Below are positions 35,109 through 63,450 of a DNA stretch of 64,000 nt, in pieces. The notes under the pieces are model-generated. The model searched no databases and was not told the origin of the DNA. It saw only the letters and a list, made by a program, of their open reading frames with translations. This DNA comes from Phallusia mammillata (taxonomy: Eukaryota), in assembly GCA_965637545.1 (NCBI GenBank), contig OZ281500.1, positions 7,626,001 to 7,690,000 on the forward strand, read 5' to 3'. Made by a program: the position numbers and the translations under genes. Every line of letters begins with the position of its first letter. Position 1 is the first letter of the stretch.

Positions 35109-35185
35109 GATGGTTTATGGCACCCAACCCACACACGTGCAACGTTTTTTGACGTTATCAAACGTTGTTTGAAAGATCAAAAAGC
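35109..35185. promoter_or_regulatory. LARGE non-coding first exon and very compact LARGE/SMN bidirectional promoter
   Basis: Minus-strand donor c|gtaagtac at 35108 pairs with acceptor ttgttacag at 34261; the SMN ATG at 35186 on plus leaves 76 bp between exon end and ATG; central CACGTG. Confidence 0.55.
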
Positions 35186-36410
35186 ATGACTTCTAGTAAG
35201 AATGAAATAGTTTTTCGCAGGACTAAAGGGAAATATGATGATTGTGATCCTGATATGTGGGACGATAATGCATTGATCAATGTATACGACGCCGCGGTAT
35301 CGGGTCTACCGGTTGCAAACACGCCAAATGATGACAGTTCTCAAGTATCTGAGGATGAAATAGTTGACCAAACAAACTACGGTGAAATGGTTTGGACGAG
35401 AGAAGCAGGAGTGATTGCTGATGAGCCACAATCCACAACACAGCGAAAGAAGGGCAAAAGAAACAAACGAAAACGAAACAAGGGAAGTGGTAAGCTCCTT
35501 CATCTTGACAATTATAGTCAACAATAACTTGAAAATATTCTATGAGAGATTTTTTCACACATTTTTATGTAATTTATGTTCTGTGCACATCTTAATATGA
35601 TAGTTTTACCAGAAACATAATGTGATGGACAGAGTATCAAAGTATACCATATGTGGCACTGAACAACCCTTTAGGAAAAGTTAATTGTAGCCTAAATTTA
35701 AGCATGAGCAAGACTACCCAAGTTTATGTGTGCTTTTGTAACAAGCATTATTAGTATTATCAAAACTGGTTTTATTTAGCTAAGTTAATTGTACTTGTTA
35801 AATTTTAGTGCAAAAGCAAAGCAGAAGCTCGGACTGGAGCATTGGTGACAAGTGTATGGCTATGTATTATGAAGATGGAATGTACTACAAAGCAGAGATT
35901 GTTGAAGTAGGTGATCAGACAATTAACGTCAACTTTACTGAATATAATGAGGAGGAGGTGGTTGACTATGCTGATGTTCACCCAAGAAGTCTTTGGGAAA
36001 ATGCTGGAATCAATTTGTCACAACAACCCTCTAGCATTGTGGAGGGAGAAACAGAAAGCGCACTATCCACTGAAAGTGAGAAACAACCACAACCTAAAAG
36101 AAGCAAAGAAAAATGGACAAAAGAACAAACAGCAAACTCAAGAACAGATTCTCTTTTTCCCACTCCTGACTTTGATTTTTCTAACCCTATGTCCAATTTA
36201 CCCCCTCCTCCGCCATTATTGCCCCCAAGTGGATTAATTCCGGACAATTCCAATCTTTCTTGTAATAATTGCAATTGTTGTAAGAACAACAATTTGTCCA
36301 AAGAATCATTATCGTCAATGTTAGTTAGCTGGTACATGTCTGGTTATCACACAGGGTATTATCGAGGCATACATTCTTCAATGCCACAAAAGTGTAGCAA
36401 AAAATCATAG
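35186..36410 (+). CDS. SMN: Survival motor neuron protein; two coding exons (35186-35489, 35809-36410)
   Basis: Gemin2-binding DDCDPDMWDDNALINVYDAAV; basic stretch; Tudor WSIGDKCMAMYYEDGMYYKAEI; poly-Pro; YG box LSSMLVSWYMSGYHTGYYRG. Phase-1 GT-AG intron. Confidence 0.95.
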
Positions 36411-40808: not shown

Positions 40809-43800
40809 ATGTTAAGTGGTAAAAATTTGCTGTTAGTTTCTTTGCTGTGTATCACGTTTGCTGTCATAGCGGGAGGCGATAAAGCAGATGGCGATGAAAC
40901 ATATGTCTTGGACAATGGCTGCACTATTACACGAAGACAAGGCAATTCAACAGCACCTCCTATGTAGGTCATAGATGTTCTGCAGCAGTTTTCTGATATG
41001 TAACTTCACTAATATAACGACAAGTTACATGGTCACATTTTGAATCTAAAGTCATGGTCGAAACATAACAGTTTTAGAAACTTACTAAATGTATTTCCAG
41101 ACCATGGTACGGGATGCCCCTGCCTCACCTAAACTGCTCAGGGGCAGGATTGACCAGATTAGATGTTGAAGCTGTGGTCGACGACACAAAGAGCATTACC
41201 TTGTCCTACAATGATATGATTGAATTTCACGTTGACGATTTAAACGGTTTTCCAGTATTGGAGAAAATCGAGCTCAAAGTCAACAACTTAACCAGGGTGG
41301 TTCCCTCAAAAACTCAGGAAGTTTTGAAGTCGGTACGCCACATTTCTCTTACGTGAGTAGAAGCAGTGCTTTACGATTATCCTGTTTTGTTGGGACCAAA
41401 ATTATGAGTTTTTTGCTTAACGGATAAGCATAAAAGGGGGTTCGGTTAAACGCATATCTAATTTGCCAAGTTCATTTTATAGTAGGTGCTGATCAGCACA
41501 TGCGATTAACCTTTTTTCTCAAACAAATGTCTTGGGTTTAAGTTGTGACAATGTGACACATTTATCCTATATAGTACATAACGTCCTTCATCAAGGGAAG
41601 TGATAATAATCGAATGCCAGCAGTAATATAAAGAACCACTGCTGTTTACTGAAATCCACCAACTTAAAAACACACCAATACAAGAATAAACTCATTGCTT
41701 TACTTAGGAACAACAAATTGACTGAAGTTCCCAATGAAGCTTTGAAAAGTTTTCCCAACCTGAGAATCCTTGTTTTGCATAGCAATGCCATCACAAAAAT
41801 TCGAAACCATGATCTCCGTTATAATAAAAAGTTGGAGGTATTCATGTACTTTTGACCAGTTGTTAGTTAAGCTTTGACTTTACTAAGTTCTGCAAACCTT
41901 TTTAGTACTTGTACTTGGGACCAAATCCTATTGAAACTTTCGAAGATGAATTCCTTGCAACTTTAAATCTTACTGGATTAGGTTTGCGTTCGTGCGGTTT
42001 AAGGAAATTACCGACACACTTTTCAAAAATGACAAGTACGTATTACAGCAATTATAAAAAAGCCTACTTTCAACGTTTTCCCAGGAAAGTGTTTAACTTC
42101 TTGCATTTTCATCAGAATTGGTTTATGTGGACATTTCCGTAAACAAAATAACAAGTTTGGGTCCAAACTCCTTTCGAAATTGCCAAAAGCTGCGTTGGCT
42201 GGAACTTGCGTCAAACCAAATACACACCGTTGATGCGTTAGCTTTCAAAGGTGACCAATCCAAATATTACATATCACATATATTTCCGTGTTTGGAAGCT
42301 ATATTCCACCTAAAAAATTGCTTTATTCCAGGTGCATATAACTTAAAGATGATTGACCTTTCGGATAATTTAATCACATTTATTCCAAACAACACGTTTA
42401 ACGACATCAGCAAAGAACGTGTGGAAATTGATTTGTATGAGAATCCAATGACTTGTGATTGCTCAAATGCTTGGTTGAAAGAATGGTACGATAAGGTGAC
42501 TATACTTTGTTTGGGTGTTCTGTTTTGCAAGGAAAAATTTTAAATGCTCTTAGCTTGTGGAACACGATATATCTACCGAACTGCGATTCAGATGTGAACA
42601 ACCTTTGCGAAATCACGAAAAGAAATTTTACCAGCTCCAACTAAGTGATTTAACATGCATGAGTGATGACCAGCAATGGCAAGGTTTGATTTGTTTCTTT
42701 ATTTTCTTCTATGATAAAAAAACGTCTTCAAAATAATTTCCTGATAAAAAATGCATGATGAAGCAGCAAGTTCAGTATAAAAAAGCGTTCTATAAATCGG
42801 ATGGATAGCTGGCCTATTTCACACTTGTGAGTAGGCCTATCATTAGTCTCTTATTCAAATACAGTAGAAGCCTTATTTCTAGCCTGTGGTGAATCCCACA
42901 TTTAAGCCAAACAACAGAAAATGTTGTGATTGTCCATCAGCACTTCATAAAGTGCCGAAAAATTTATCCAGTTCAGTTTTATTTCCGTACATTTTGGCAA
43001 AAAAATGACAAATACTGAACCTCCTGTTTTTGAATCGTTCATCGATGTCAACACGGTGTTTCAAATGCGGTTTGTAAATAACACAGACTGTTCAGCTCCT
43101 GCTCCTTCGCCGCACACACTAGTGACTACCACGGCTAGAGTTGTCGAAAACCGCAATGCTTGTCCCCAAGGTTGCACTTGCTACGATGAAAACGGTCGAA
43201 GATATGCACCACCTCCGAACAAATCTTCAGGAGCTGGTCCACGTACACGAATTCATGGGTTGGAATTTGTTTTTTATCTGATTATGCACTTATAAAACAC
43301 TTTTGACAAATTTATTATCAGGTTGTCCATTTCCTCAGATCCGTTTTTGAAAAGATGTTTTATTTAGATTCGCTTACATGAAATTCGCGAAACTTAGTGT
43401 GAGTTGTATTGGAATTGGGCTGACTCGGATTCCAACTGAAAGTATGCGATCTGATGTACAAATGATAGTTTTGTCGGACAACAACATTTCGACACTGGAC
43501 TTGACGGAATTGAAAAAGTTCAAAGACCTTAATATACTCGACCTCAAACGTAAGTGGTACCAGTGCTGGATTCGGGCATAACATTGAATATAAAACTGTC
43601 TGTGCTGGATACTGATTCACTCTCGTCACTTTTTTGTCGAGATACTCGGCAAATGCCTTGGTAAACTTAACTTTCAAGCCTAATCGGGCTTTATTACAAA
43701 CAAAATTCGGGTTTAGGGGGGCTTTAGGTTTACATTTTACTGTTTGGGCACAATTTGGGACCCGCTTAATAAATAAAAACAAACCTGATTTTTATCAAAT

Positions 43801-45723
43801 CATCAGTCATCCATTAAACTTATCCTTTCTAACAGGAAACGGGATAAAGGAAATTAAAGCTTCCTCCCAAGTAGTATTAAAAGATGTTACCTTGGTAAAT
43901 CTTCGCTTCAACAACCTCACCACAGTAGAGAGCAGTCATTTTCGTTCATTTCCCAACCTTGAAATTGTGATGCTCTACCACAACCAGATAAAACGGTTTC
44001 CCAACAACCTGTTTGTCCACAACCCGTAAGTTTTTGTTTGTTTGTTTTTTCTGCACCCAGTTTCAAGTATTGTTGGTCCATTTCAGGAAACTAAACCGTG
44101 TCTACCTGGGTCCTAACCCCATTGAAAAATTTCAGTTCCACTTTCTTAAAGCACTTGACATTTACAGCTTGTCGCTTCGAAAGTTGTCCTTGAAGTCGGT
44201 TCCACAAGAAATTGCTACGATGGTTATAATACGTTTTATCTTGTGTTACATCTTTTGCTTCATTATTTTCCATGTATCCCGTATTTTTTGCAGAAAAACC
44301 TCACCTATCTTGATTTAAATGACAATCACATTACGTCGCTTCCCAATGAAACATTTTCGAACACGACCGCTCTGTACAGAATAAAAGTAGAAAACAACAA
44401 AATCGAATCAATCGGGGTCAATGCGTTCAAGTAAGTTGGTAAAGACCTAGTGAAAACAGGCTGAGTTGCTAAATTCAGGATTAAACGCATGAGAAATGGG
44501 GAAATTTTTGCTCAAAACGGGCAATTTAAACTAAAAATTGCGATATATTCTTTTCAGTGGTGCAACTCTTCTGCGATTTGTTTATCTTTCTGAAAATAAA
44601 ATCAAGACGCTTCCTGCTGGAATCTTCTCAAACATCAGTCAGGAGAGATTGAAAGTCGAACTGTGGAGCAACCCGATGGTTTGTGATTGCAACCTGAAGT
44701 GGTTCAAGACATGGATTGAGGAGGTAAGTAACGATCTGAACACTCAAACATTCGGAAACTGGCCGAACTAAGATATAGGAACTTGCTTGGTGTGATGCGT
44801 TGATGTTGTTCTATAGGCCGAGGAACGGGATCCAACAACAGACGTTCGATTTATTTGTTCAACGCCATCTCGGGTTCACAATAAAAAATCTGACGAACTT
44901 TCACCAGCAGAATTCTTCTGTAAAGATGCCGATAAAAATGATGATGGATGTAAGTTTCAAAACTGGTAATGCAACAAAAAATGTCAATACCGTGTTGTAT
45001 TTTTAAAAGGGAAGACGACTGTTGATATATTCTGGACACTTTTTATTTAAAAAAAAAACAAGATCCCCCCTTCTGAATTTTGCAACCGTTGCGCAATGTT
45101 TGTAGAATATGGGCTAGTAGTTTTAGAAATACTCGTCAGTAAACTAGACCACTTAAAATACTTGCTAAATATAAGTTAGTGCTGGAAATCTGTTTCGCGT
45201 TACAACTACCCTTTTGTATTAATATGCGCCTTTAATACACTTTGAAACTTTTTTAGTTTCGCTTTTAAAACATTTCTTTGATAACAAATTGCACACTTGT
45301 TTATAAAAATCAGTTTTAAAAATTGTTACCGTCTTGCGGTATCATAACCCTTATCAACATAAAGAAGAAAGAATGATTATTTTTACTTATTGCTTCCTGT
45401 TTAAAGAATGCGGAACATTCTTCTACAATCTACATCAATGGTTCTCAACCTTTTACTGATCGTTTTGACCACTTTATCTATTGCTGCGTACCGCTACCGT
45501 TGAAGCCAAAGTAGTTTCAAAAGTACATTAAAAATGTTTTTCAGTGGCATGTTCAGTCTGCAAGATCCCGGCTGGACCCATCGCTCTCACTGTGCTCCTG
45601 ACATTTGTGGTAACGGCAGTCTGCTGCTGCGTTGTGTGGCGATGTACGTTCAAGAGAAGATACGGCGATTTGATAAAGTACACAAGGGGTAAAGATACAT
45701 ACAGTGAAGTGGACACCATGTAG
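40809..45723 (+). CDS. LRR single-pass membrane receptor, paralog A (15 coding exons): SP-[LRRNT-LRRs-LRRCT]x2-TM-short Tyr tail
   Basis: Signal peptide MLSGKNLLLVSLLCITFAVIAG; LxxLxLxxN repeats; LRRCT ENPMTCDC and SNPMVCDC; TM PIALTVLLTFVVTAVCCCVVW; tail RCTFKRRYGDLIKYTRGKDTYSEVDTM* (TAG 45721-45723). All introns GT-AG and in phase. Confidence 0.85.
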
Positions 45724-46694
45724 CATACAGCACACATTTGTAAATAAACTAGTTGTTGTCGAGATTGTCATTTCTTCGCACGGAAGAGAACTAGAAGACT
45801 GAAGAACATGCAGCCCTACCCTTGTTTCTTTTAATCATTCGTCGTTGGGATTTCAACAGTAACCTTTGCCTTAATTGTAATGTTTTGCGATTTACTTCAT
45901 TGTTGACTTACTACGTTGGTTAAAAATCTCGATTTTATTTGTCAAATCATATTTAAATAATGTTGTACAATAAAAAAATGTATCGTATAGTAGCCGGACC
46001 ACTAAAATGGAATTGATGTCGTTTTAACCTTCAGCGTACAACGTATTTACAAATTTGTTCACGATGGGGAACTTGTACTGAGAAAGTATTGAGTGACAAT
46101 AATAAATAAAGACATGTAAAAAGTGCTGGGTTGTGTTTAAACTGTTTTCATTTTTTAGAAACTCTTTAGTCAAATATTGCAATGAACGGTATTGAGAAAC
46201 GATCCTTGCAGTTCGTATTAGAGTTTAAAGTAACATTGGCTCTACAATTCAAGAAACTAATTAATTTTGCCTTTAAATCCTTAAAACTGCTAATAGAATC
46301 AGCGTTTTTAAGCTCTCTGTTTGCTTTTCACTCAAACTTTGTTGACCTGCTTTGGACGATAACACAGCAGCTTGGTAAATAATTTCCTAACGTGCGTGGC
46401 ACCCATTGGTATTAGTTGGCAAAAAAGGCGCCATGTAGTCAAGTGCAAAGCGATTCGATGTCTGTCAAACAAGACCATCAGTAGTTAATCAACAGATAGT
46501 AACAAGAGCTAACTTTAGACCAAGCGCTATAAAATGTATGACAGAATTTGTATTGGGTGCATATCAGTTGTGTTAAAAATTATACGAGGGCTTACTAAGT
46601 TGTTGCCAAACCTTGCTAACAATAAGCTGCTAGGCTTGTCTGACCTGTATTTGTTTTTACCTTTAAACGCTGGTTATTGAAGTTTTGATACAAA

Positions 46695-49600
46695 ATGATG
46701 CTTATTCGTAAAAATACACTGTTTTGTGCTGTACTGGGTATTGCGTTTGCTGCTACAGTGTGGGGTGATGAAGCAGATGGCGATGTGACCTTTCTATTGG
46801 ACAACGGCTGTTCCATCACCAGAAGACCAGTAAATTCAACAGCACCCCCAATGTAAGTGTTGTTGTTGTTTTGAATTTTCTTGCGTTAGACACAACAGTC
46901 AAAATACACAAGCTGGTAAACAGTTATAAAAGAGAGAATTTTGTTGAGGTAGCTTACCCATTGATAGCAAAAATTTATTCGTAAAGTATTTCAATAACTG
47001 TTGGATGTTTGATGTAGACCCTGGTATGGGATGCCTCTACCTCACTTGAATTGCTCAGGAGCCGGGCTTACAAGATTGGATGTTGAGGCCGTCGTTAACG
47101 ACACGAAGAGCATTTCTTTGTCTTATAATGATATGATCGAATTTCATGTCGACGATTTAAAAGAGTTTCCTGGGGTGGAAAAATTAGAGTTAAAAGTAAA
47201 TAAGCTCACCAGGGTCGTCGCATCACAAGACACGCCCGAAGCAATGATGAAATCCCTACGATATATTTCCCTAACGTAAGAGTCAAGTTGGTTAAGTTTA
47301 TTGTAGTTAAAACCGTATCAAGATAAAGAATCACAAATGATTGCTACAATCCGATAGAGGGCGCAAAAGCACAGTTTTTTTCAACTTTAGAAACTAAATT
47401 TAGTATAGGATCTAGGTATTTATGTTATGTGTAATATCGTTTTCTAATGAAACCTCACCCCAACCCAAATAACCCTAACCGTAGCATTTTCTTACAATTA
47501 AGATTTCAATGTTTCTTAATGCTCGTTGTGTCACCTATCAGTAAACTTTTGTTATTTGAAGCTTTATGTTCCGAAGTCATTCATTTAAATTTCATTAAGA
47601 AAAACGAAAAAGAATATCCACCAGATTTGTCATATTTTTTTTCACTTGGGTTTTAAAAGTTCATGGTTGATTTTTGTGAAAATATTTAGTTTGCAAAAGC
47701 GTTTTTTTCAAAGTCGATTTCAAATACCAGTTTCTTTCTTTGCGAGTTGAAACAACTTTTAAAGTGTACCCTGTGTTAAATCTCTACTCAATGCCAACAC
47801 ATCGGTCCGTTCGTAACTGCACGGTTACCTGTCATGCCCTGAAAGTCAATTTTTACCCTATTCATTGTTTTCTCAGCCACAACAAATTGACTGCAGTCCC
47901 AAACGCAGCTTTAAAAAGCTTTCCGGAATTGAAATTCCTAATTTTGTTCAGTAACGCTATTACTAAATTTCGGAACGATGATTTTCGGTACAACAAAAAA
48001 CTCGAGGTATAACAGTTCCATATACTGCATAAGTCCTTTATCAAACATTTCGATAACACAGTGCTCTATACCAACAGTTCTTGTATTTGGGGCCGAACCC
48101 GGTTGAAACTTTCGAAGACGATTTTCTCTCGAAAATGAATCTCACCGGATTAGGCTTGCGCTCATGTGGTTTAAAAAGTTTGCCCGTTCATATTGCGACA
48201 ATGACAAGTAAGTTTCCCTTTCTCAATTCAAATGTTTGTTCACTAGCGCAGTACCATTAACTACCAGTTTGTTTTGTCGAAGTGTGCTGAGGTTTTACAC
48301 ATGCATACCTGATTTTCTGACTACTTTATATAAAAACAATTTAAGGATGTATGTCACTTCACACAATAATGTAACAATATTAGATGATCTTTTCAAAATG
48401 TGAATGGCATCCACAACGACATACAAGTTTGAACAAAAACCTCCATCATTTTACACAAAAACATTGTAAAGAAATCAGGCTTTATTGCATGATGCTTTAT
48501 AGCTTGCTTTTCTAGCCCTGTACTCTTTCAGGGTTGGTCTATCTCGACCTTTCTGTCAACAAACTAACAAGTTTGTCACCAAATTCCTTTCGGGATTGTC
48601 GCCAGTTACGTTGGCTCGAAATTGCGTCGAATCAAATACACACCGTTGACGCATTTGCATTCAAAGGTACATATTGAAAGTTACACATTATTTATGTAAA
48701 AATGTGACATTTATGATAAATTTTGAACACATTCTAGGGGCATTTGCCTTAAAGATGATTGACCTTTCGGATAATTTGATTACTGTCATTCCAAACAACA
48801 CGTTCAGCGACATCAGCAAAGAACGTGTGGAAATTGATTTGTATGAGAATCCGTTGGTTTGTGATTGCTCAAATGCTTGGTTAAAAGGATGGTACGATGA
48901 GGTACGGTTTATGTAAATTTGGAATATCGTCCAAATTGAAACGTGGACAAACCTTCACACAGACTTAAATATTAAATGCGTGTTTAAGTTGGCCGCAAAA
49001 AAAATCATTTTTTCAACTATGTCCAACTATTTCGGACACAGCACTCCCATTAGTACAGGCCTATACCTATTAGTTCCATTTAGTTAAATATGTGGACCGT
49101 TACAGTATGTTATGTATTACGGCAAACACTTTAAAATAAAAACAATAAAATTTCACTAACCATTAGGCAAGAACTAAAAGCAAAAAGCAAATTTTGTAGT
49201 GACATTTGTTTTGGGGAACTAATTGGTGTAATTGTTTAATGTACCATTGAAAAGTTGTAATTTCCGTTTGATGACACACAACAATTAAGACGATAAAATT
49301 GTGCCAAAAAACATATCTTATAGGATTGTAACTTGTATTTTTAACTTGCTGTAAATAACAATCTTTCCACCAATATGGCAATATGTATTTGACTTTACGA
49401 TAAAAGTAATCCTCGAATTAAAATTATAAACTAGATTTAAAACACCAAGATTCGGCAATAAAATGAACGATGATCCAAGCGCAGGTTGTAGCATTTAAGT
49501 GTCGTTCAATATGGCGGCATTAGAATAAATGCGCATCGGCTATTTTTTACCGTTTCAGCTTGTTGAGCATGATATGTCTACCGAGCTGCGCTTCAAATGC

Positions 49601-52600
49601 GTACAACCATTGAGAAATCATGGAAAGAAAAGTTACCAGCTTCAACTTAGCGATTTCACATGCAAGGACGATGACCAGCAATGGCAAGGTTTGTTTTTGT
49701 AAAGAATTTTAGTGTTGGTAAATTGCATTGCTGACAACTATTCACGTGGGCGCCGGCACGTATGGGCAAGAGGAGAGACAAGCAATTCCACTGTGTACAA
49801 TTTAAGCCTATATGCTCATAATTAAACGATAGCGTAATTCATTCGTGTAAGTATGTATGTGTCAAAAGTTACCGCCTCTTCCAAAATTTTCTGCCGGCGC
49901 CGATGCCTATTTATACTATTTCAAGCTTTTAAAAGAAGAGCAATTGACAGTAAATATGCATCTTGATGTGTAAATATGACGCCGGAAGTCTGCAATCTTT
50001 AAAAAAATGTGAAAAATGCCAATTGTATTGCCAGAAGAGCTCTATACATCTGATATCATATACCTGGCAGCAACAGCTCTGAGAAAATGTATTTAAAATC
50101 TCCAAAATAGTTTTGTAAATTTGCGGCACAATGTTTTTATGGTGCTTTTTATCCATGTATCCACTTTACAGATTGTAACGCGCCATCACCCCCAGTGACT
50201 TCTTCCCCACTGACCGTAACCTCCACGACAACACCCGTTGTCGACAACCCAGCAGCATGTCCCGAAGGTTGCACTTGCTTCGATGAAATGGGCAAACAGT
50301 ATTCACCCGCGACCGATACAACTGATAGCAAACCAGGACTCCGTCAAATACGAGGGTTAACTTTTCTTTTCACTTAAAATAAGATTAGGACAATGCTGTC
50401 TGAATTGCAGCCAACCCAAATGCTATTTACCAGTTCAAATCGCTTAGTGATCTTAATAGGTTTTGGTTGTAAACATTAGTTTTAGAAAAAAAAATTGATA
50501 TTATTTTTAGAAAAAGTATGGTGCAACACAAAAGTGTGGTTCTTTGTAACTTGTGAACAAATTAAAAGAATTTTTTCGATTACAGATTTCGTTACAAGAT
50601 GTTTGCACAGCTCAGTGTGAGTTGTATTGGAACTGGATTGACTCGGATTCCGGTCGAAGATATGCGCTCTGACGTTAAGATGATAATTTTTTCCGACAAC
50701 AATATTTCGACACTCGACTTGGTTCAATTCAAGAAATTTAAAGACTTGAAAATATTAAACCTTAAAAGTAAGCGTGATGCCGCTTTCGTAAGTGCGTCTC
50801 GATGAATTTTTAAACAAATATTTTTGCTTTCAGGAAACGGAATAAAAAAGATAAAGGCTGCCCCCACAATGGTCCTAGAACAGGTCACCTTATTAAACCT
50901 TCGCTTTAACAATATTACGGCAGTATCCAGTTTGCATTTCAAGTCTTTTCCAAATCTTGAAATCATTACGCTTTACCACAACCAAATCAAATATTTCCCC
51001 GACAAATTGTTTTCTAACAATCGGTAAGTAACAGAAAAAACATCTTGGTTCTGCTTTGAGCTTTGTTTCTTATTTTCCTTTTTTTCTCAATATAGGAAGC
51101 TGAACCGCGTCTACCTAGGCCCAAACCCTATCAAGACGTTCAATTTTCACTTTCTCAAAGATCTTGACCTTTTCAGCTTATCGCTGCGAAAGTTGTCGCT
51201 CAATTCAGTTCCAGCGGAAATTTCCACCCTGGTAACAAAAATATAGTTTAAAATTGGTATGAGTTCGTCCACACACATTAAAACGTTTAATTTTTTTAGA
51301 AAAACCTTACTTTTCTTGATATGAGTGACAATTTTATTACGTCGGTGCCAAATGGAACATTCTCGACGACCAGTGCTCTATTCCGTCTCAGAATGGAAAA
51401 CAACAAAATCGAATCAATCGGGGTCAACGCTTTTAAGTACGTCCTAAACTAGTTTGAAAAACCCTCACATAAAATTCCACAACTATACCGCAATAAAACC
51501 TTCAATAACAAACCGACTAGGGCAGTGGTTCTTGACCTTTTTGGTGTGGTTTCCCACTAAAGTCAATCACCAACTTCGAATTTCCCCCTCTGTTATTTTT
51601 ATAAACATGTTTTGTGCCCTACGTTAACAAAAAAATATTCTTTAAATGAAATAATTTTGTGGAGCGCTTTGGTCTGGACCCTAACGGTATACTGCAATCT
51701 TATTTAGTTTAAATAGTGCTACTGTGAGAGATTAAACTTTTTGGAATACTGAAGAGTCTGCTATGCTTGCATTAGTCATTTATTGCATCACAATCAACAA
51801 AGGAAAGGCTTTTATTCGCGCACAACAGCAAAGTCATTGATGGTTTCAGTCTTGTCTGTGATGTAACAAATGGCCTTTGGATTTGTATGTGTCTTGTAAA
51901 CCTTGGTTAAATCAATCTTACATGTTGTTGCAGAACATTTTTAGTAATGTAGCTTTCAACGGTTAATTCAAAGCCGGATTGGACCCTCGTGCCCGCGGTT
52001 GCTCTTTTCAAGCTTACATAATTTCCCTCCGAAAACATTAAATTTCCCACCGGTTAAGAACCACTGGACTAGGGTTACAATTCGAGTTTGTTTGCAGTGG
52101 CGCCACGTTGTTGCAATGGCTTTACCTTTCCGAAAATAAAATCAAGACGCTTCCTGCTGGAGTCTTCTCAAACATCAGTCAGGAGAGATTGAAAGTCGAA
52201 CTGTGGAGCAACCCGATGGTTTGCGATTGCAATTTGAGATGGTTCAAGACATGGATTGAAGAGGTAAGTAACGATCTGAACTCTCAAACATTCGGAAACT
52301 GGCCGAACTAAGATAGTCAATGAAAACCGCACACCCTTTATAGAGGACAGTGGACAAATTGTGTGTCAAGAGGCATTTTATGTTATATTTTCATCTAAAA
52401 GCAGATGTTAAGCTATATATGCATAAGTTAGTTTTGCAGATATTTCATTTATAAATGTAAAAGTATCAAGCCAATAAATGACAGACGGTACCCACTGTTT
52501 TAGACCTAAATAGGCTGCAGACAATAGTAATACACACTGTTTTGGCCTATAGTCTCATCAGGGCAGCTGGTTTTACTAGCGTCTCCATGTAAATGTTGTT

Positions 52601-53494
52601 GTTTTTTCAAATATTGGTTTGTTTGTTTTTCGAGCGCTTCAAAAAGTGCAAGGTGGGTTTTGGTGTTGACAATTTTGTGGTTTGGGTTATAATAGACGGA
52701 GGAACGCGATCCAACAACTGACGTGCGATTCATCTGTACATCCCCATCTCGTGTTCATAACAAAAAGTCGGATGAGCTTACACCTGAAGACTTCGTCTGT
52801 GAAGATTCAGATAAAGGCGATGATGGGACCAACGCCAGTAAGTCAAAAAACTGAACTTGAGTATAAATTGGGCTATTCCTAAACTTGATATTGTCAAGTA
52901 AGCGGCCAAAATTAATATCTTGTTAAGTAAGGTGTGTAACCAAATCTGCACTTCACAAACCGGTCATTGTATTTACCCTAACACCAAGTCAAAGTCAAAA
53001 ATCTTTCGAGAAATTTTTGCCCACATTTATTCTGCAAATGATGCATAGGTATTTCAGCCAATATCTTCGCCCAGTATAACATACGATCTATAGTTTGATT
53101 TTGGTCAATGTAGGTCGTGCCGGGTTTTTCGTGTTAGGTTAGGGATTGATTTTGAATAAAACAGGCTTGGACTAGGCTTTATTAGGTTCATTTGTGCCGC
53201 AATTTTACCACCTGTCGGGTCTATTTGTTTTAAACCTCTGTGTTGAACACTTTTGCATATCGCTGATCCGCCTAATAATTTGGTAGTTGACATCTACAAT
53301 TTGAATACTTTGCAGTATCGTGTCAAGTGTGCAAAGTACCAGCTGGATCTATTGCACTGACCGCACTCCTAACATTTTTGGCAACAGCAATTTGCTGCTG
53401 CGTTGCGTGGCGATGTACGTTTAAACGAAGATATGGCGAACTGATACAGTATGCAAAACAAAGAGACAACTACGGTCAGATGGACGACATGTAA
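46695..53494 (+). CDS. LRR single-pass membrane receptor, paralog B (same exon structure as A)
   Basis: Signal peptide MMLIRKNTLFCAVLGIAFAATVWG; exon-for-exon homology with A (e.g. MPLPHLNCSGAGLTRLDVEAVV in both); TM SIALTALLTFLATAICCCVAW; tail RCTFKRRYGELIQYAKQRDNYGQMDDM* (TAA 53492-53494). Confidence 0.85.
49743..49905. mobile_element. Small MITE-like inverted-repeat element in a paralog B intron
   Basis: Left cacgtgggcgccggca and right tgccggcgccgatg are imperfect inverted repeats; absent from the equivalent intron of A. Confidence 0.5.
51523..52066. mobile_element. hAT (Buster-type) MITE in paralog B intron 12
   Basis: TIRs cagtggttcttgacc / ggttaagaaccactg; perfect TSD GACTAGGG (51515-51522, 52067-52074). 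Confidence 0.88.
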
Positions 53495-54443: not shown

Positions 54444-57400
54444 ATGGGATTACTTGGAGCAAGTCTGGTGTTGGGAATATTGGTAACTTGTTCGTTTGGA
54501 GGTAAGAGACCATTTGTCTGTCTCAAAATTACTGCCTGACTGTTTTATTTACTTTTTTATCCCCCCAAACAGTCTTATCGTTAAAAAACTCTTTGTGTAA
54601 AAATACTTGCTTTCAAAAACTATTTTTGCTAGAAAGACTCAAGGGATCAAATTTTCTGGGGTTGTAGCTTTTTCAGCCAAGTGCCTTTGAAACTATATTT
54701 TAATTTAAACTTTAAAAACTGTCCACGTTTTTAGGTCGAATTGGAACGACCAGGCAGCGACAAGTTTTAACAGGTGACACAGTCAAATTGCGGTGTCAGG
54801 GCGATGCGCGGGGGCCACAAGTCGGACTTCAATGGAGTTTTCCGAAATCCATGTCTTCGAACGGTCGTGGAAGCGTTGTGCCAACTAAAACTGAAATCAG
54901 CGGCGGAAAACTAATACTTCGAAGTTCACTGAAACTCAATAACGCAACCACGGAAGACACAGGGTATTACGTGTGCAGATACAGGTTGCTAAGCAATGAA
55001 ACCAGCAAAGACTGGGATCAGCCTGAAAACTCTGCCTCAAAAACTTGGATCAAGCGTATTTACCTTTATGTTTACGGTTAGTTTTGAAAACGATATGCCG
55101 TTGGCTAGTGGTAGGGAGCGTTGTGTTAAAATCTTTGGTTTTTGCAGATGGTAGAACGTTACTTCTCGATGTGCCTGGAAAAATTGAAGCCAACATACAC
55201 AAAGACGTCGTGGTGCCTTGTAGACCAACCAGGGAAGATGTGGTGGTCGGTTTGTCAAAGTTAGCAGACGATACACCTGCAACGAGGGTAAGGGCACACC
55301 CCAACCAACATCACTGTTTGCAAACAAGCATTTCTTCGTTAAGTTTCATGTTTTTTGTTATCATATGATCTAAATGACCTATGGTCGATAATTTTCTGTT
55401 TTAAAGTTATCATATGATCCAACTATATCATATGACCTAAATGTATCTGTTGTTTTCAGTTGTCGTATGATCCAACCGCGGGTTTCACTTTACATAACAC
55501 GACTGACTATGATGTAGGCCTGTGGAAGTGTACAGCGACATACCAGGGAATAAAACATTACCACCGTTTTCTTCTCACTGTTAACAAAGGTAAAAAACAA
55601 CTCCCGTTGCTGCGCAGGCATAAGTCCGCAACGCCTGTATTTTTCAATTGCAGAAACCCAAAAACGAATGGGAGAGCTGTTAATCAAAGCCGACAGTTAC
55701 GCATTTCTATCGCAAAAGATCCGTGTTATGTGCGAAGTAGAGGTTCCCGGTCAAGCGGTAACATTTGAATGGATTGCACCAAACGGACGTAACCTCACTG
55801 GAGGCGATAAGGTATTTCTTTGATACATCCATGTTTGGTTTGTCTGCGTGGATGAAACTTAAATCAAATCGTTCATTTCCATAAAAGCAAGAGTGCAAAG
55901 TACAGAAATATCACCTGGAAGTTTATGAACAAACTATGTGCTACAAACCATTTATGGTTGAAGTATGACCATAGTGTTTTGTCATGGCATACCTTGTACT
56001 TCATTATTTTTATACACGTCTGAAAATTATAGGTAACTTACTTTGAACTACCTGCAAAGAGCAACGGTATGGACGTATGGCGAAGCTGGCTTACATTGTC
56101 CAGGGCAAGTCTTAACGACAGCGGCACTTACATCTGCGACGCCCTATACAATGGCAAACGCAAGACGGCAGAAACCGACATAGTTGTGTATGGTAAGCCC
56201 CACGGAGTCACGTTACTTAAATTTCCGCGAAGGGGTATTTTAAACAACTCGTGTCGTCTTCTTACAGAAACTCCGTACATAAAAATTACCGGTTGTTCGG
56301 CGAGTGGAGAAAATCAGACGAGCCTGAACGCTGTCAAAGGATACGAAGTGGCGCTTAATTTTTCCGTTGACGCTTATCCTGCTCCTACCTTTTCGTGGCA
56401 CAATGGCACTACTTTGCTTCGCGCTGATGGCGCCGATAACAGGATTGTCATCAAAATGTCTAGTCTCTTAATTCGTGATGTAGGCTATGCTGATGAAGCA
56501 ACATACACTCTGACAATATCAAATCGCGCAGATACCGTACAACGAAAAGTTTTTCTCCGTGTAATCGGTAAGGATCTTGTGCTTGTGAACTTTCCTGGCA
56601 GCAAATTAAGTTTATTAATAATTTACAGAACCGGAAAAGCCAAGAATACTAGAAATTGCTGAAGAGGTCGTAGTGGACCTTGGGTTGGATTATGAGGTGG
56701 CTTGCAAAGTTTCTGGCGTTCCCACTCCTGAAATCATGTGGTATCACAACGAAATTCCAATACCTCAAGGTTTAACTCAAACCATTCTGTAACTTGTACA
56801 CTCCACTGGTTGGTAGTTAACATATATATATGAAATCTTAGCCACCACTGAAGAGCTAAAAATCACAAGAGTGCAAGCCGAGGATGGGGGTACATACACC
56901 TGTCATGCTCGTAACGGACTGGGAGAAGCAACGCGCCAACAGATCTTACATATCAATGGTAAGAGAAGTTCATGTATTATTATTGCATTATAGTCGTCAT
57001 TACCCAAAACTGTTTTACTTTTTAGATGCAAACCAGCTTCATCGCATCCTATTCTCGTCTTTGTCCGTCGTAATGTTTCTCACTATTGTGTGCGGGGCAT
57101 GGATGCTTATCTCCAAGATGAGAAGAATCAAGAAAGTACGTGATGCACTGTTAACCATTCACAAACATTGCAAAAAACAAAATCTTATTTCAACAGCTTC
57201 AACGACAACTAAGGCTGGAGCAAAAATATCTGGTCCCTGTGCTCGATATCAAGCAGATGCCAGTGGAGGAACACGCTCAATGTTTGTCTTACGATCCCAA
57301 GAAATGGGAATTCCCGAGAGATCGTCTAAAGTTTGGCAAGACTCTTGGCCGTGGGGCGTTCGGCAAAGTGGTGCAGGCGACCGCCTTTGATCTCGAGCGT

Positions 57401-60400
57401 TCCTCTTCCTGCAAAACCGTGGCTGTGAAAATGCTCAAAGGTGAGAAATTTCAACAAACGGCAGACGCGCGTGTACTTTTCTCCAAGTTGAACGTTGCCC
57501 AGATCATCGCTATTTATGTCCGCGACATATTTACCTTTGTGTATTTTGCACTGAGAAAGTCTTTGCTTGAACTTGCTTTAAATTTAGTCACCGTCACTCA
57601 GCGATATTCTTATTCAGATTTGCCCTAGCGTTATTTGGGCTCAAGATTTCAATATTCGGGGTATGACTTCCGCTTTGGAGTCAGCGTGACATTGCTGTGT
57701 GCCCCTGGTCGTGCGCCACAGGTCTTTGGCGAGTCACAGGTTTTCACACTACCCAACCCGGTATTCGATGGCAGCGCACTGATCTGCTTAACCGCACAAT
57801 ACGCTAGTAATATTGTTCCATTTATGGAGTGGCGCCGTAAGTCTGCCTCGATTGGTCATATTTTCCAATACAGCAATCGGAAACTATCCTCAGCGCTGCT
57901 TCCTCGCCGCTGCCCGAACTCCGATCCAATCTGACATTTACATTGGACATTTTGCGTAAGCGTTACGTCACGCGAACCAGCGTTCACACAATTTGCAGCC
58001 ACAAAAACAAAAAAATTAAAGGCCATTTTGCATGTATGTTCTAAAAGGAGTTGTAGGGCTCGATATTTAAAACAACGTTTTGCGGATACCAATTGTAAAA
58101 TGAACCCACGCGGATCAATTTGATGTGTTTCCTTATCCACGTAGTTGCGGTTTTAATTGCACTAATTGGCATCTGGGACAAATGTAATTGAAATCATATG
58201 TGACACTTTTTTTTACAGTGGGATCCCGAAGCAGCGAATACAGCGCCTTGATGTCAGAACTCAAAATTCTTATTCACCTTGGCTCCCATTTGAACATTGT
58301 CAATCTGTTGGGCGCTTGTACGACAAAAGATGGTAAAAGCACCTTTTTTGATCTGTTTGCATTTAATTTATTTTGTGCGAGGTTTGTGAATTTAAAACTC
58401 TTCAATTCTAGGTCCACTGATGATCATTGTGGAGTACTGTCGCCATGGCAACTTATCGACTTACTTGAGAGGCATGCGTGATTGTTATGTTGGCGGACGA
58501 GTCGACGGAGCCGAGAAAAAAGTGCTCAGTAACGACTCAAAAAAATGCCGGCTCTTAAGTGAGGACTCAACGGACGACGGAGCCTTCTCGGGTCTGGAGA
58601 ACGACAGATCGAGCTGGTTGACTGACAAACGAGTGAGCCGAGCTTCGTGTACAAGCGCTGCTGACACTGTAGCGTCGCAAGAATGTGAGATCACTGGACA
58701 AACCAACTTGTCAAGGTATGGTTGAGATATGCTTTTGGGCGATGTTGGATTCAGGCTGTTTAATCACATGCATACGCGTAAAATATGAAAAAGTATCGGC
58801 TTTTTGAGTTTCTTGACCTGTATTAGTGAAAATGTTTGAACCAGTCATGTCACAGTTTGTAGTGGTAACTTGTTAGCATGTCTTAAGGTTTGCACCTTAC
58901 AAAAAATCGTTATCTCTTTTCGACTATGCATCCAACAGCATACAGTCAAACTTGTAAAGTCGAATGTTTTGGTTTCCCTTTATAGCCATTAACTATACGA
59001 TTGTTGTTGTTTTAGCGGTTGCGAAGATAGTCGGATGAGTTTGCGGAAAGTGTCGGAAACAAACGAAGACGACAAGGAGAAAAAAGATGAAAAGACAACT
59101 CTTACCCTCACCGATCTGCTCTCGTACAGTCTTCAAGTTGCAAGAGGGATGGAGTTTTTGGCATCGAAAAAGGTAAATATAAAAATCAAACACCACTAGA
59201 GAAACTCCGTTTAATTTAGTTTCCGTGATGAAAATCAGTTACGTTTTGAAAGCTAACATTTTTTGACGCCGTTTAGCAACAAAACTTCAAATGCAAACTG
59301 CTGAAAACCTATCGTAAAACGTATTATGAAAATTTTTTAAATCAGAACAAAAAAACGAACAAATTTACTATGTCAGTGCATGGGAGTTCGTAGACAGCCG
59401 GTCGCCTCATTTCCTGCGATATTTACAATTGGGGGTGAAAGTTGGTGCGTGTGCTTGTGGGAAAGTTACCTTCTCTTCTCCGTTTGGCATCAATAGAGTA
59501 GCAATCGCCAATTGTTGAATACGCGGTGACTGTTTTGCAGGAAACTGATTTGTTAAATATCCTCGCAGTGAACTTTATATCGGACCTATCTCGTTTCTTG
59601 GCCGATCGCGTGGAGTTTAATCAATCGAAAAACTGTTTGTTGCATTCCTGTGGACATATGGCACCCGCGTTCGGCTGATAAGGTGTTATTTGTAATCAAC
59701 TTGCCAAATACCACATATTAATTCTTTACAACGACTGAGCAATGTCGCCAGTACCGTATTTAGATCCAGCCTGTGGAATGAATCAACGAGTAGAATTTTT
59801 GTTATGAAAGTTACCGATTCCAAGTTTGGCCATCTAGCCTGAATCGTGGTCAAAACATTTTCATTTTTGCAGTGCATTCACCGAGACTTGGCAGCAAGAA
59901 ACGTGCTGATCTCCGATTACCAAGTGGTAAAAATTTGCGACTTCGGTCTTGCAAGAGACGTCTACAAAGATCCGGATTATATTCAAAACGGAGAAGCGCG
60001 TCTTCCTATCAAATGGATGGCACCAGAGTCGATTTTTGACAAGATTTACTCCACAAAAAGCGATGTGTAGGTTTCTCATATTAATTAACATAATATTTTC
60101 GAAAAAATGGTGATCGAGAATTTTGGTTAATTAGGTGGTCGTTCGGAGTCTTGCTTTGGGAAATATTCAGCCTTGGTGGATCGCCTTACCCTGGTATACA
60201 AATGGACAAAGATTTCTGTAATAAACTGAAGCGAGGTGTACGAATGAGCAAACCCGAATATTCATCAGATTCAGCGTGAGTTAAAATCAAATTATGAGTT
60301 GTTTGCTTTTTTCATATTGGATTCAACCAATTGTTTTTCTTTAGATATTCCAATATGCTGGCTTGTTGGGCAAACCAACCAGAAGAACGACCAACCTTCA

Positions 60401-61349: not shown

Positions 61350-61598
61350 AGGCGCACCAAAAGAAGCACGATCAGAGCCGTGTAAAGAGGTGCCAATAGA
61401 CTGGGACGTCGTTAGAACTGCTCTTAGTTGCACATTTCACGCCTTCACATTCCTACAACAGAGCTTCAAGCTGCCAGTTAGGACTATTAGTGTAGAGTGC
61501 ACCTTGAGGCGTACCGACCAAAACATTTACAAGTCTTTTCACTGCCAAACATTCAACAGAAGTGATTAACATCTCGATTCAAATCTGTTTGTCTAGTG

Positions 61599-63204: not shown

Positions 63205-63450
63205 CTACTTATTTGCTGCGCGACTTAACAAATTGCTGATAGCCTGCTGCAGATCACCATTCACTCGACTTAGTTCAGTTTCTGCCTGTGACCGCTTGAA
63301 GCCCATATCCAAAAGTTGACGAACTTTATCGTTAAACACAGCTGGGGAGAAATTGTTCTGTGGTCCAGGCTGCTCATGCGGAGGTTCTCCCGATGAATGT
63401 ACTAAATTTAAGTTGCTCGTTTCAGGCTTCATCGCTTCTGCAGCAGACTC
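63205..63450 (-). CDS. Terminal exon of a protein ending in a UBA domain (DDI1/2-like is possible); upstream exons not resolved
   Basis: Acceptor tttacag at 63451, then ESAAEAMK..DKVRQLLDMGFKRSQAETELSRVNGDLQQAISNLL (MGF loop, LL end typical of UBA). Confidence 0.7.
   Translation of the reverse strand, partial: ESAAEAMKPETSNLNLVHSSGEPPHEQPGPQNNFSPAVFNDKVRQLLDMGFKRSQAETELSRVNGDLQQAISNLLSRAANK

What the first reader, a model, noticed from the sequence alone, without database searches (positions are those of the whole stretch)
40809..53494. Tandem pair of TIR-less, double-module LRR receptors: a possible undescribed receptor family
Seen: two intact paralogs with identical 15-exon structure: signal peptide, LRRNT-LRRs-LRRCT, Pro/Thr-rich linker, second LRRNT-LRRs-LRRCT, CxxC, TM, CCC and a ~27-aa tail. 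No TIR, Ig, FN3 or kinase domain. Known: a mid-ectodomain cysteine cap recalls multi-cysteine-cluster Toll and Slit modules, and TIR-less LRR receptors signal through partners in some invertebrates (Hydra HyLRR/HyTRR). I cannot assign a known ortholog. Inference: a lineage-specific recognition receptor family (innate immunity, allorecognition or adhesion), or an LRIG/Kekkon-style modulator of the adjacent RTK.
Basis: partly seen in the sequence, partly recalled or inferred. Interest (0 to 1): 0.75.

Follow-up and report, generated by a model that had tools for sequence, protein, structure and literature searches.

The report
Ascidian double-LRR membrane receptor gene pair
[quoted passage not shown] They belong to an uncharacterised family kept across ascidians beside the VEGF-receptor gene, and they look like receptors for a conserved partner, not fast-evolving immune sensors.

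Summary
Gene A (40809-45723) and gene B (46695-53494) are intact 15-exon + strand genes with GT-AG introns and identical phases. They encode 796 and 806 aa: signal peptide, capped LRR module, Pro/Thr linker, second capped LRR module, CxxC, TM, Cys cluster, 27-aa tail. There is no TIR, Ig, FN3 or kinase domain.

The family is not confined to this genome. Full-length relatives exist in Ciona, Clavelina, Styela and Phallusia, labelled only "uncharacterized" or "slit homolog-like". Outside tunicates, scores fall to generic LRR proteins. Three more copies 2.5 Mb away are 94-98% identical to a Phallusia mammillata protein, which names the organism.

The window holds the ancestral locus. SMN, VEGFR and DDI2 flank family members in other ascidians, and VEGFR is adjacent in Ciona and Styela.

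A and B are under purifying selection (dN/dS 0.13). Their concave LRR faces are more conserved than the rest, and the tail motif RYGxLLxY is conserved. This argues against a diversifying immune or allorecognition receptor and for an adhesion receptor or co-receptor with a conserved ligand. SLITRK and CHADL are the nearest architectures, but homology is not shown. Expression of A and B is unconfirmed. An earlier scan note (s1-385375) on this window had flagged the conserved intron 13 start.

The parts
40809..45723 (+). Gene A: 15 exons, 796 aa. Exons: 40809-40963, 41101-41352, 41708-41837, 41906-42035, 42116-42250, 42332-42495, 42554-42683, 43087-43258, 43368-43549, 43836-44025, 44087-44222, 44294-44430, 44558-44723, 44817-44949, 45545-45723.
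   Evidence: Model built from open frames, A/B conservation and GT-AG sites; open frame with no internal stop.
46695..53494 (+). Gene B: 15 exons, 806 aa. Exons: 46695-46852, 47018-47275, 47877-48006, 48078-48207, 48532-48666, 48738-48901, 49559-49688, 50172-50355, 50586-50767, 50834-51023, 51096-51231, 51300-51436, 52098-52263, 52696-52837, 53316-53494.
   Evidence: Same phases as A; 73% protein identity to A.
41101..42683 (+). Gene A exons 2-7: LRR module 1, made of an N-cap (begun in exon 1), 9 LRRs plus cap repeat, and LRRCT. The equivalent in B is 47018-49688.
   Evidence: Pfam LRR_8/LRR_4/LRR_1 on the exons; LRR register laid out; generic LRR hits in PDB.
43087..43258 (+). Gene A exon 8: Pro/Thr/Ser-rich linker and the start of LRRNT2 (CPQGCTC), followed by a basic loop inserted before the fourth cap cysteine. 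The equivalent in B is 50172-50355.
   Evidence: Translation; family alignment. The equivalent stretches of paralog P0007 have pLDDT below 50 (residues 361-379 and 399-422).
43368..44949 (+). Gene A exons 9-14: LRR module 2, made of the end of LRRNT2, 9 LRRs plus cap repeat, LRRCT and an acidic stalk. The equivalent in B is 50586-52837.
   Evidence: Pfam on the exons; 37% identity to module 1, one intron position shared exactly and three within 1-4 residues.
45545..45723 (+). Gene A exon 15: CxxC, TM helix, CCC, juxtamembrane WRCTF, tail motif RRYGDLIKY and an acidic C-terminus ending in the stop codon. The equivalent in B is 53316-53494.
   Evidence: Translation. Own-genome search finds the same exon in B and in three distant copies. 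The tail motif is conserved in Ciona, Clavelina and one unassigned JGI metagenome sequence (P0079).
44724..44775 (+). The first 52 nt of intron 13 of A. It is 51/52 identical to B 52264-52315, and read-through would add VSNDLN(T/S)QTFGNWPN-stop. It is a conserved element of unknown role.
   Evidence: all other ungapped 60-nt intron flanks match at 8-30 of 60. The element is absent from copies C, D and E.
35165..36410 (+). SMN (Tudor/YG-box) gene upstream, used as a synteny anchor.
   Evidence: ORFs. It matches the SMN gene that lies directly upstream of the Clavelina family member.
54788..61350 (+). VEGFR-type receptor tyrosine kinase gene (Ig domains plus split kinase), about 1.3 kb downstream of B.
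   Evidence: ORFs. The kinase exon hits VEGFR1 and VEGFR2 best in PDB. It is collinear with the RTK next to the Ciona and Styela family members.
63205..63432 (-). C-terminal (UBA) exon of a DDI1/2-type gene, used as a synteny anchor.
   Evidence: ORF. It matches the DDI2 gene beside the Ciona member. DDI2 is also beside the second Clavelina member.

Best explanation
A and B are tandem paralogs of an ascidian-wide, functionally uncharacterised family of type I membrane glycoproteins. The ectodomain is two capped LRR horseshoes, each with 9 LRRs plus a cap repeat, that arose by internal duplication. A flexible Pro/Thr/Ser linker joins them. Behind them come a short stalk with CxxC, one TM helix, juxtamembrane cysteines (candidate palmitoylation sites) and a 27-30-aa tail carrying a conserved RYGxLLxY(A)K.. 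motif and an acidic end.

The window is the family's ancestral locus (SMN - LRR - VEGFR - DDI2).

Most likely mechanism (inferred, not shown): the concave LRR faces bind a conserved endogenous extracellular or cell-surface ligand, in the manner of SLITRK, LRRTM or FLRT adhesion receptors. Having no enzymatic or TIR domain, the protein would act through proteins recruited to the conserved tail, or through a co-receptor in the membrane.
For: Shown:
- Intact gene models.
- Only LRR and LRRCT domains.
- AlphaFold model of paralog P0007: two confident solenoids (pLDDT about 85-92), a disordered linker and a TM helix at 737-767.
- Full-length relatives with the same architecture in Phallusia, Ciona, Clavelina and Styela, plus two contigs that carry an uninterrupted ORF and so look transcript-derived.
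- A sharp score drop to generic LRR proteins outside tunicates.
- A tree that groups sequences by ascidian order, with the Phallusia copies monophyletic.
- Shared neighbours: VEGFR in Ciona and Styela, SMN in Clavelina, DDI2 in Ciona and Clavelina.
- A-B dN/dS 0.13, and 0.08-0.14 within the LRR modules.
- Concave x positions more conserved than the rest of the LRR: 80 vs 72% for A-B, 54 vs 43% for A-Clavelina, 47 vs 41% for A-Ciona, 38 vs 33% for A-Styela.
- Tail motif conserved across orders.

Inferred: ligand binding on the concave faces, palmitoylation, and signalling through the tail.
Against: - No ligand, partner or expression pattern is known for A or B.
- The only contig laid on gene A is one unspliced 271-nt piece from a run whose RNA label is itself a guess, so transcription of A and B is unconfirmed.
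- The concave-versus-rest differences are consistent in direction but not individually significant (Fisher p = 0.18 and 0.06).
- dS between A and B is near saturation (1.29), so dN/dS is approximate.
- The young copies C, D and E have a higher dN/dS (0.36-0.39), which leaves room for relaxed or diversifying selection there.
Confidence: 0.55

Rival explanations
1. It is a TIR-less pattern-recognition receptor. The LRR ectodomain would bind microbial molecules and signal through a TIR-bearing or other partner, as proposed for Hydra HyLRR/HyTRR and as with vertebrate RP105/CD180.
For: The best profile hits in PDB are TLR3, TLR7, TLR13 and Toll ectodomains, although these are generic long-LRR matches. 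In Ciona robusta, TIR-less 'TLR-like' LRR-TM genes (*CiTLR6, *CiTLR7) are expressed in hyaline and refractile amoebocytes alongside MyD88 and NF-kB (PMC12816324). *CiTLR6 may be the Ciona member of this family, because its PANTHER match starts at residue 396 and LRRNT2 of P0202 starts at 398, but I could not verify this. Phallusia has expanded the family to at least 5 copies, and the young copies have dN/dS 0.36-0.39.
Against: dN/dS for A-B is 0.13, and the concave faces are more conserved than the rest. Only one Ciona gene was found. Neighbouring genes are conserved across ascidian orders. The conserved tail motif has no likeness to known TLR-pathway motifs. The identity with *CiTLR6 is unproven: none of my searches returned the *CiTLR6 accession XP_002130253.1, and it is not in the Ciona cluster listed.
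Confidence: 0.2
2. It is a cis-acting modulator or co-receptor of the neighbouring VEGFR, in the LRIG/Kekkon manner. The two genes would have stayed adjacent because they are co-regulated or work together.
For: The VEGFR ortholog is the immediate same-strand neighbour in Phallusia (this window), Styela (LRR then VEGFR, 2 kb apart) and Ciona (VEGFR then LRR, 1.2 kb apart). These span the Phlebobranchia and Stolidobranchia in genomes known for scrambled synteny, a point noted in PMC12816324.
Against: Adjacency alone is not evidence of binding. Gene order differs between Ciona and the other two species. Neither Clavelina member has VEGFR within 10 kb. Copies C, D and E sit 2.5 Mb away. The protein lacks the Ig domains of LRIG and Kekkon. 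No complex prediction or expression correlation was done.
Confidence: 0.12
3. It is the tunicate ortholog (co-ortholog) of a vertebrate double-LRR protein: SLITRK (two LRR modules plus TM) or chondroadherin-like CHADL (two LRR modules plus Pro-rich linker, secreted).
For: The ESM Atlas structure search with P0007 puts chordate CHADL clusters first (TM-score 0.56/0.53 over 565 aligned residues spanning both modules) and a SLITRK5 cluster sixth (0.45/0.41). SLITRKs are defined as TM proteins with two LRR domains (PMC9846221). A 2026 OrthoFinder analysis put one Ciona TIR-less LRR gene in a SLITRK orthogroup (PMC12816324).
Against: There is no sequence-level affinity. Neither SLITRK nor chondroadherin is among the best 60 PDB profile hits, which are TLR3, LRRC15, LRIG1 and LGR4. 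With one exon piece, SLITRK1 and CHAD rank far below LGR4 and LRRTM2. From my own knowledge, SLITRK modules have 6 LRRs against 9 here, and their coding sequence is intronless against 15 exons here. The tail has no Trk-like region. CHADL has no TM. PMC9846221 states that no urochordate SLITRK ortholog is known.
Confidence: 0.12

Closest known systems
SLITRK1-6 (vertebrate Slit- and Trk-like synaptic adhesion proteins)
   Same: Type I membrane proteins whose ectodomain is two separately capped LRR modules joined by a linker, with no Ig or FN3 domain (PMC9846221; architecture-level match).
   Different: This family has 9 LRRs plus a cap repeat per module, against 6 in SLITRK (my knowledge). The gene has 15 exons, while SLITRK coding sequence is intronless (my knowledge). 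The tail is 27-30 aa with an RYGxLLxY motif and has no Trk-like region. There is no sequence-level affinity. SLITRK orthologs are reported absent from urochordates.
Chondroadherin-like protein CHADL (class IV SLRP)
   Same: Two consecutive capped LRR modules of similar size joined by a linker. It is the best structural look-alike in the ESM Atlas (TM-score 0.56/0.53 over 565 residues).
   Different: CHADL is a secreted matrix protein with no TM helix or tail (my knowledge; Tillgren 2015 is cited in PMC11917481 but could not be read). Chondroadherin is not among the top PDB sequence hits.
Slit1-3 (source of the automatic database names 'slit homolog 1/3')
   Same: LRRNT-LRR-LRRCT modules of the same general type arranged in series.
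   Different: Slit has four LRR modules followed by EGF repeats, a laminin-G domain and a cystine knot, and it is secreted (my knowledge). This family has two modules, a TM helix and none of those domains. The database name is a best-hit artefact.
Multiple-cysteine-cluster Toll/TLR, and TIR-less TLR-like proteins (RP105/CD180, Hydra HyLRR, Ciona *CiTLR6/7)
   Same: LRR ectodomain with internal cysteine caps, a single TM helix and, in the TIR-less forms, a short tail. PDB profile hits are led by TLR3, TLR7 and Toll.
   Different: There is no TIR domain. The two modules are separated by a disordered linker and do not form one continuous solenoid. The selection pattern is conservative.
LRIG1-3 / Drosophila Kekkon (LRR-Ig modulators of receptor tyrosine kinases)
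   Same: LRR type I membrane proteins, here with an RTK gene as a conserved neighbour. LRIG1 is among the top PDB profile hits.
   Different: LRIG and Kekkon carry Ig domains after a single LRR module. This family has none and has a second LRR module instead.

Membership tests
Ascidian double-LRR TM family (P0007, P0151, P0152/P0202, P0006, P0022, P0027, P0079; alignment A1) | Collinear full-length similarity with the same order of parts: SP, NGC...HLNC cap, module 1, linker, CPxxCxC cap, module 2, TM, short tail | tested here: met
   A and B align end to end with all members at 34-53% identity. The cap cysteines, which are invariant in the database-only alignment A1, line up with A and B in the regions printed. 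The exon query finds these proteins with the match at the same residue positions.
Ascidian double-LRR TM family | Position at the SMN / VEGFR / DDI2 locus | tested here: met
   The window order is SMN - A - B - VEGFR - DDI2. VEGFR is adjacent in Ciona and Styela, SMN in Clavelina, and DDI2 in Ciona and Clavelina.
Toll-like receptors | Cytoplasmic TIR domain | tested here: not met
   The tail is 27 aa and ends at a stop codon conserved in relatives, including the Phallusia record CAB3266366.1. Pfam finds no TIR in the exons or in five full-length relatives.
SLITRK | Two capped LRR modules plus a single TM helix | tested here: met
   The definition is taken from PMC9846221.
SLITRK | Six LRRs per module; C-terminal region with Trk-like conserved tyrosine (SLITRK2-6); intronless coding sequence | tested here: not met
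   This family has 9 LRRs plus a cap repeat per module, a 27-aa tail and 15 exons. The SLITRK features themselves are from my own knowledge and were not checked against SLITRK sequences.
SLITRK | Sequence-level orthology (modules group with SLITRK modules in a tree) | tested here: inconclusive
   No SLITRK sequence could be obtained for a tree. SLITRK1 is a weak, non-preferred PDB hit (E = 3.6e-10, against 6.8e-15 for LGR4) and is not in the top 60 profile hits.
Slit | Four LRR modules followed by EGF repeats, a LamG domain and a C-terminal cystine knot; secreted | tested here: not met
   There are only two modules, then a TM helix. Pfam finds no EGF, LamG or CTCK.
CHADL / chondroadherin (class IV SLRP) | Two chondroadherin-like LRR modules, secreted, no TM helix | tested here: not met
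   Two modules are present and the Atlas structural match is the best found. However, a TM helix and a conserved tail are present, and chondroadherin is not a preferred sequence hit.
LRIG / Kekkon | An LRR module followed by one or more Ig domains | tested here: not met
   No Ig domain is found in the exons or in relatives.

The most novel reading that the evidence does not exclude
The family is an ascidian invention (or a highly diverged stem relative of SLITRK/CHADL) that works together with VEGFR. On this reading the LRR gene and the VEGFR gene have stayed immediate neighbours since the last common ancestor of phlebobranch and stolidobranch ascidians because the LRR protein is a co-receptor or modulator of VEGFR signalling, for example in haemocytes or vessel cells.
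Probability: 0.12. Interest if true: 0.7.

Novelty: new variant of a known kind. Interest (0 to 1): 0.4.

Why it matters
Extracellular LRR membrane proteins are a main toolkit for cell-cell recognition in nervous and immune systems. The vertebrate double-module SLITRKs are said to have no urochordate counterpart (PMC9846221). This report defines an ascidian-wide double-module LRR membrane family with a conserved cytoplasmic motif and an identified ancestral locus beside VEGFR.

That gives a named, testable candidate for three open questions:
- What TIR-less "TLR-like" LRR genes of tunicates really are.
- Whether double-module LRR receptors predate vertebrates.
- Whether VEGFR has an LRR partner in the vertebrate sister group.

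The report also corrects misleading database labels ("slit homolog 1/3"). If the family turns out to be an ordinary adhesion molecule, the result is still useful annotation but of modest general interest.

Tried and rejected
- **RNA evidence.** The run search found no run on record as RNA that holds the locus. Four runs guessed to be RNA gave only one unspliced 271-nt contig (41219-41489) and no splice joints. Expression of A and B therefore remains open.
- **Spliced models and the operators' rule.** Spliced models of A and B were never sent to a search or fold tool. All searches of the window's genes were exon by exon, by reference. Joined models were used only inside local scripts, for length, identity, dN/dS, the LRR register and the tree. 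Structure prediction, profile searches and the Atlas search used database relatives as proxies (P0007 and alignment A1).
- **Sequence and fold searches.** PDB sequence and profile searches and Foldseek gave only generic long-LRR matches (TLR3/7/8/9, LGR4, LRIG1, LRRC15). They are not informative about orthology.
- **Link to the 2026 Ciona paper.** I tried to tie the Ciona member LOC100179272 to *CiTLR6 (KY21.Chr4.574). Literature searches for accessions and gene IDs found only that paper, its supplement holds no sequences, and the Ciona cluster carries only 'slit homolog 3' names. The question is unresolved. One search was a badly set search.
- **Intronless LRR genes elsewhere.** The roughly 640-aa intronless LRR genes on C6 could have been SLITRK-like. 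The one I read (L029) has LRRNT-LRR-LRRCT, then a non-LRR extracellular stretch that I read by eye as FN3-like (no domain scan was run), then a TM helix. That resembles FLRT, and it is unrelated to this family.
- **CHADL paper.** Tillgren 2015 (PMC4294519) is not held.
- **Complex prediction.** I did not run a complex prediction with VEGFR, because neighbouring genes alone do not justify it and no full-length referenced chains of A, B or VEGFR exist.
- **Human synteny.** A memory-based idea that human 4q12 (SPATA18 ... KDR) or 22q (LARGE1, CHADL) synteny points to a vertebrate ortholog could not be tested, so I make no claim from it.

Full report
**Observation**

The + strand between 40809 and 53494 holds two complete genes. 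I rebuilt both from open frames, A-versus-B DNA conservation and splice sites.
- Gene A (40809-45723) and gene B (46695-53494) each have 15 exons, and every intron is GT...AG.
- Intron phases are identical in the two genes. Exon lengths are identical, or differ by multiples of three in exons 1, 2, 8 and 14.
- The joined frames are open for 796 and 806 codons.
- Exons are 68-89% identical in DNA, while the ungapped 60-nt intron flanks match at about chance level (8-30 of 60). These are real, selected coding exons.
- Pfam sees only LRR families in the exons and only LRR/LRRCT in five full-length relatives. There is no TIR, Ig, FN3 or kinase domain.

The two modules are 37% identical over 301 residues with a single gap. 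One intron position is shared exactly, three lie within 1-4 residues, and one does not correspond. The double module therefore arose by internal duplication of an already intron-containing module.

**How the searches were run**

The window's genes were searched exon by exon, by reference. Joined models were used only inside local scripts for lengths, identities, dN/dS, the LRR register and a tree. For structure prediction, profile searches and the Atlas search I used database relatives as proxies.

**Relatives and organism**

Own-genome searches with two exons found A, B and three further complete copies (C, D, E). These lie on the minus strand of the same chromosome about 2.5 Mb away, spaced about 16.8 kb apart, with a more divergent double-LRRCT gene nearby.

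The exhaustive protein search with one in-frame exon pair (window:42118-42495) returned, among thousands of generic LRR hits, five proteins of 775-805 aa that match at the same residue positions as in A. Word searches with these relatives as queries (P0007, P0152 and alignment A1) and cluster look-ups added further members and names:

| Species | Database name | Accession / id | Length |
|---|---|---|---|
| Phallusia mammillata | Slit homolog 3 protein | A0A6F9DTR4 / CAB3266366.1 | 787 aa |
| Ciona | slit homolog 3 isoform X1; uncharacterized LOC100179272 | XP_009860829.1 | 797 aa (first model), 859 aa (second) |
| Clavelina lepadiformis | uncharacterized | LOC143457671 and LOC143468498 | 791 and 781 aa |
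| Styela clava | formerly slit homolog 1-like | LOC120340487 | 805 aa |
| unassigned (Logan and JGI contigs) | none | P0027, P0079 | 775 and 796 aa |

The two unassigned sequences sit on 2.6-3.5 kb contigs that carry the ORF uninterrupted. Given the 15-exon gene, these look like spliced transcripts.

After these members, scores fall sharply to artichoke, chaoptin, Tollo, TLR3/7 and LGR5-type proteins at 21-30% identity. I found no non-tunicate ortholog by sequence, with the caveat that the word searches score only 8000 candidates.

Copies C, D and E are 94-98% identical to the Phallusia mammillata protein. The genome is therefore P. mammillata or something very close to it. A and B themselves are not in the protein collection.

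**Evolution and locus**

A maximum-likelihood tree separates the stolidobranch sequences from a phlebobranch plus aplousobranch group. It joins all Phallusia copies (A+B with C/D/E) with 100/98 support.

The neighbours tell the same story:
- In Ciona the order is VEGFR(+), LRR(+), DDI2(-).
- In Styela it is LRR(+), VEGFR(+).
- In Clavelina one member follows SMN and is followed by a 438-aa LRR gene, and the other member precedes DDI2.
- In this window the order is SMN, A, B, VEGFR, DDI2(-).

The RTK is VEGFR-type by its best PDB hits and is exon-for-exon collinear with the Ciona and Styela neighbours. The window therefore carries the ancestral ascidian locus. A single ancestral gene has duplicated independently in some lineages: at least 5 copies in Phallusia, at least 3 in Clavelina, and 1 found in Ciona.

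**Selection**

- A versus B gives dN/dS 0.13 (dS 1.29, near saturation), with 0.08-0.14 in the LRR modules and 0.06-0.13 in the LRRCT caps.
- The linker has the highest dN (dS not computable there), and LRRNT2 has the highest dN/dS (0.35).
- The young copies C, D and E give 0.36-0.39.
- I assigned the LRR register and compared the solvent-exposed x positions of the concave beta-face with the remaining non-core LRR positions. The concave positions are the more conserved in every deep comparison: 80 vs 72% for A-B, 54 vs 43% for A-Clavelina, 47 vs 41% for A-Ciona and 38 vs 33% for A-Styela.
- The differences are consistent in direction but not individually significant (Fisher p = 0.18 and 0.06).

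This is the opposite of the pattern expected for diversifying immune or allorecognition LRR receptors. It points to a conserved ligand.

**Structure and tail**

AlphaFold2 on P0007 with the family alignment gives two confident solenoids (block pLDDT about 85-92). It also gives a disordered linker (361-379), a disordered basic loop inserted in LRRNT2 (399-422), a TM helix (737-767) and a disordered tail.

The tail, though short, is conserved from Phallusia to Ciona, Clavelina and the JGI sequence: W(R/K)C(T)F(K/R)xxYGxL(L/I)xY(A/T)(K/R)..(D/N), followed by an acidic end (-EEF, -DDM, -DTM). This argues for a specific cytoplasmic partner or a sorting signal (YGxL fits YxxΦ). It also suggests palmitoylation of the juxtamembrane cysteines. 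Both are inference.

**Comparison with known families**

- **TLR.** TLR membership fails because there is no TIR domain.
- **Slit.** Slit membership fails because there are two modules instead of four, no EGF, LamG or CTCK domain, and a TM helix. The database label is a best-hit artefact.
- **SLITRK and CHADL.** The nearest architectures are SLITRK (two LRR domains plus TM; PMC9846221) and CHADL. The Atlas structure search with P0007 ranks chordate CHADL clusters first (TM-score 0.56/0.53 over 565 residues) and a SLITRK5 cluster sixth. Sequence gives no support for either. The number of LRRs per module, the exon structure, the tail and, for CHADL, the TM helix all differ. PMC9846221 states that no urochordate SLITRK ortholog is known.
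- **Ciona TIR-less TLR-like genes.** A 2026 paper on Ciona TLRs (PMC12816324) reclassifies three TIR-less 'TLR-like' LRR-TM genes. One of them, *CiTLR6 (KY21.Chr4.574), fell in a SLITRK orthogroup and is expressed in many tissues and in hyaline and refractile amoebocytes. It might be the Ciona member of this family, because its PANTHER match begins at residue 396 and LRRNT2 of the Ciona protein begins at 398. I could not verify this.

**Verdict**

This is an uncharacterised, TIR-less, double-LRR membrane receptor family, but it is ascidian-wide, old and conservatively evolving, and its members are already deposited under uninformative names.

The best-supported working model is an adhesion receptor or co-receptor for a conserved endogenous ligand that signals or is sorted through a conserved short tail. 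A pattern-recognition role and a VEGFR-modulator role remain possible and testable. The conserved VEGFR adjacency is the most intriguing lead.

Expression of A and B is not shown. The only laid contig is one unspliced 271-nt piece.

Noticed in passing
window 44724-44775 and 52264-52315: The first 52 nt of intron 13 are 51/52 identical between A and B, although all other ungapped 60-nt intron flanks match at about chance level and exon 13 itself is only 89% identical. Conservation stops 4 nt after an in-frame stop, so read-through would add VSNDLN(T/S)QTFGNWPN and give a TM-less product truncated inside LRRCT2. The absence of synonymous changes suggests either nucleotide-level constraint or a very local gene conversion. 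The element is absent from copies C, D and E.
   Followed up: partly
G000:C7:10190061-10227476 (L021-L025), minus strand: Three further full-length family genes (C, D, E), with exons 2-15 intact, lie about 16.8 kb apart and are 93-97% identical to each other. The database protein P0007 (Phallusia mammillata 'Slit homolog 3') is 98% identical to both D and E. Exon 1 was not modelled.
   Followed up: partly
G000:C7:10162167-10164955 (L018), minus strand: A more divergent gene with two LRRCT-type exons about 2 kb apart is 30-45% identical to family members. No TM/tail exon was detected. It may be a sixth, divergent or decaying member.
   Followed up: partly
LRRNT2 loop: window 43190-43258 (A) and 50290-50355 (B), with relatives: The second N-cap carries a 25-35-aa disordered insert between CxC and the last cap cysteine. 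In several members the insert holds dibasic or furin-like motifs: TRKR in P0007/C/D/E, KKSRR in Styela and KKRR in P0027. A has PRTR and B has RQIR. It is a possible proprotein-convertase site and was not tested.
   Followed up: no
L026 (Ciona intestinalis AP043580.1), protein P0152: The 859-aa RefSeq model of LOC100179272 has an extra hydrophobic stretch of about 60 aa inside the LRRNT2 loop. The stretch is missing from the 797-aa Ciona model P0202 and from all other members, so it is probably a retained intron in the model.
   Followed up: no
L028 15698-17603 (Clavelina lepadiformis): A 438-aa LRR gene sits directly after the Clavelina family member. It may be a single-module or truncated tandem copy.
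   Followed up: no
L029 2181-4073 (G000:C6:4237181-4239073) and two more hits at C6:4208348 and C6:4222423: The one gene I read is intronless and about 630 aa, with LRRNT-LRR-LRRCT, then a non-LRR stretch that looks FN3-like by eye (no domain scan was run), then a TM helix. That resembles FLRT. The other two hits have open frames of similar length and were not read. They are unrelated to the family studied here.
   Followed up: partly
window 32184-34238 (-): An intronless 684-aa ORF looks by eye like a two-domain glycosyltransferase of the LARGE type. I judged this from the translation only and ran no domain scan.
   Followed up: no
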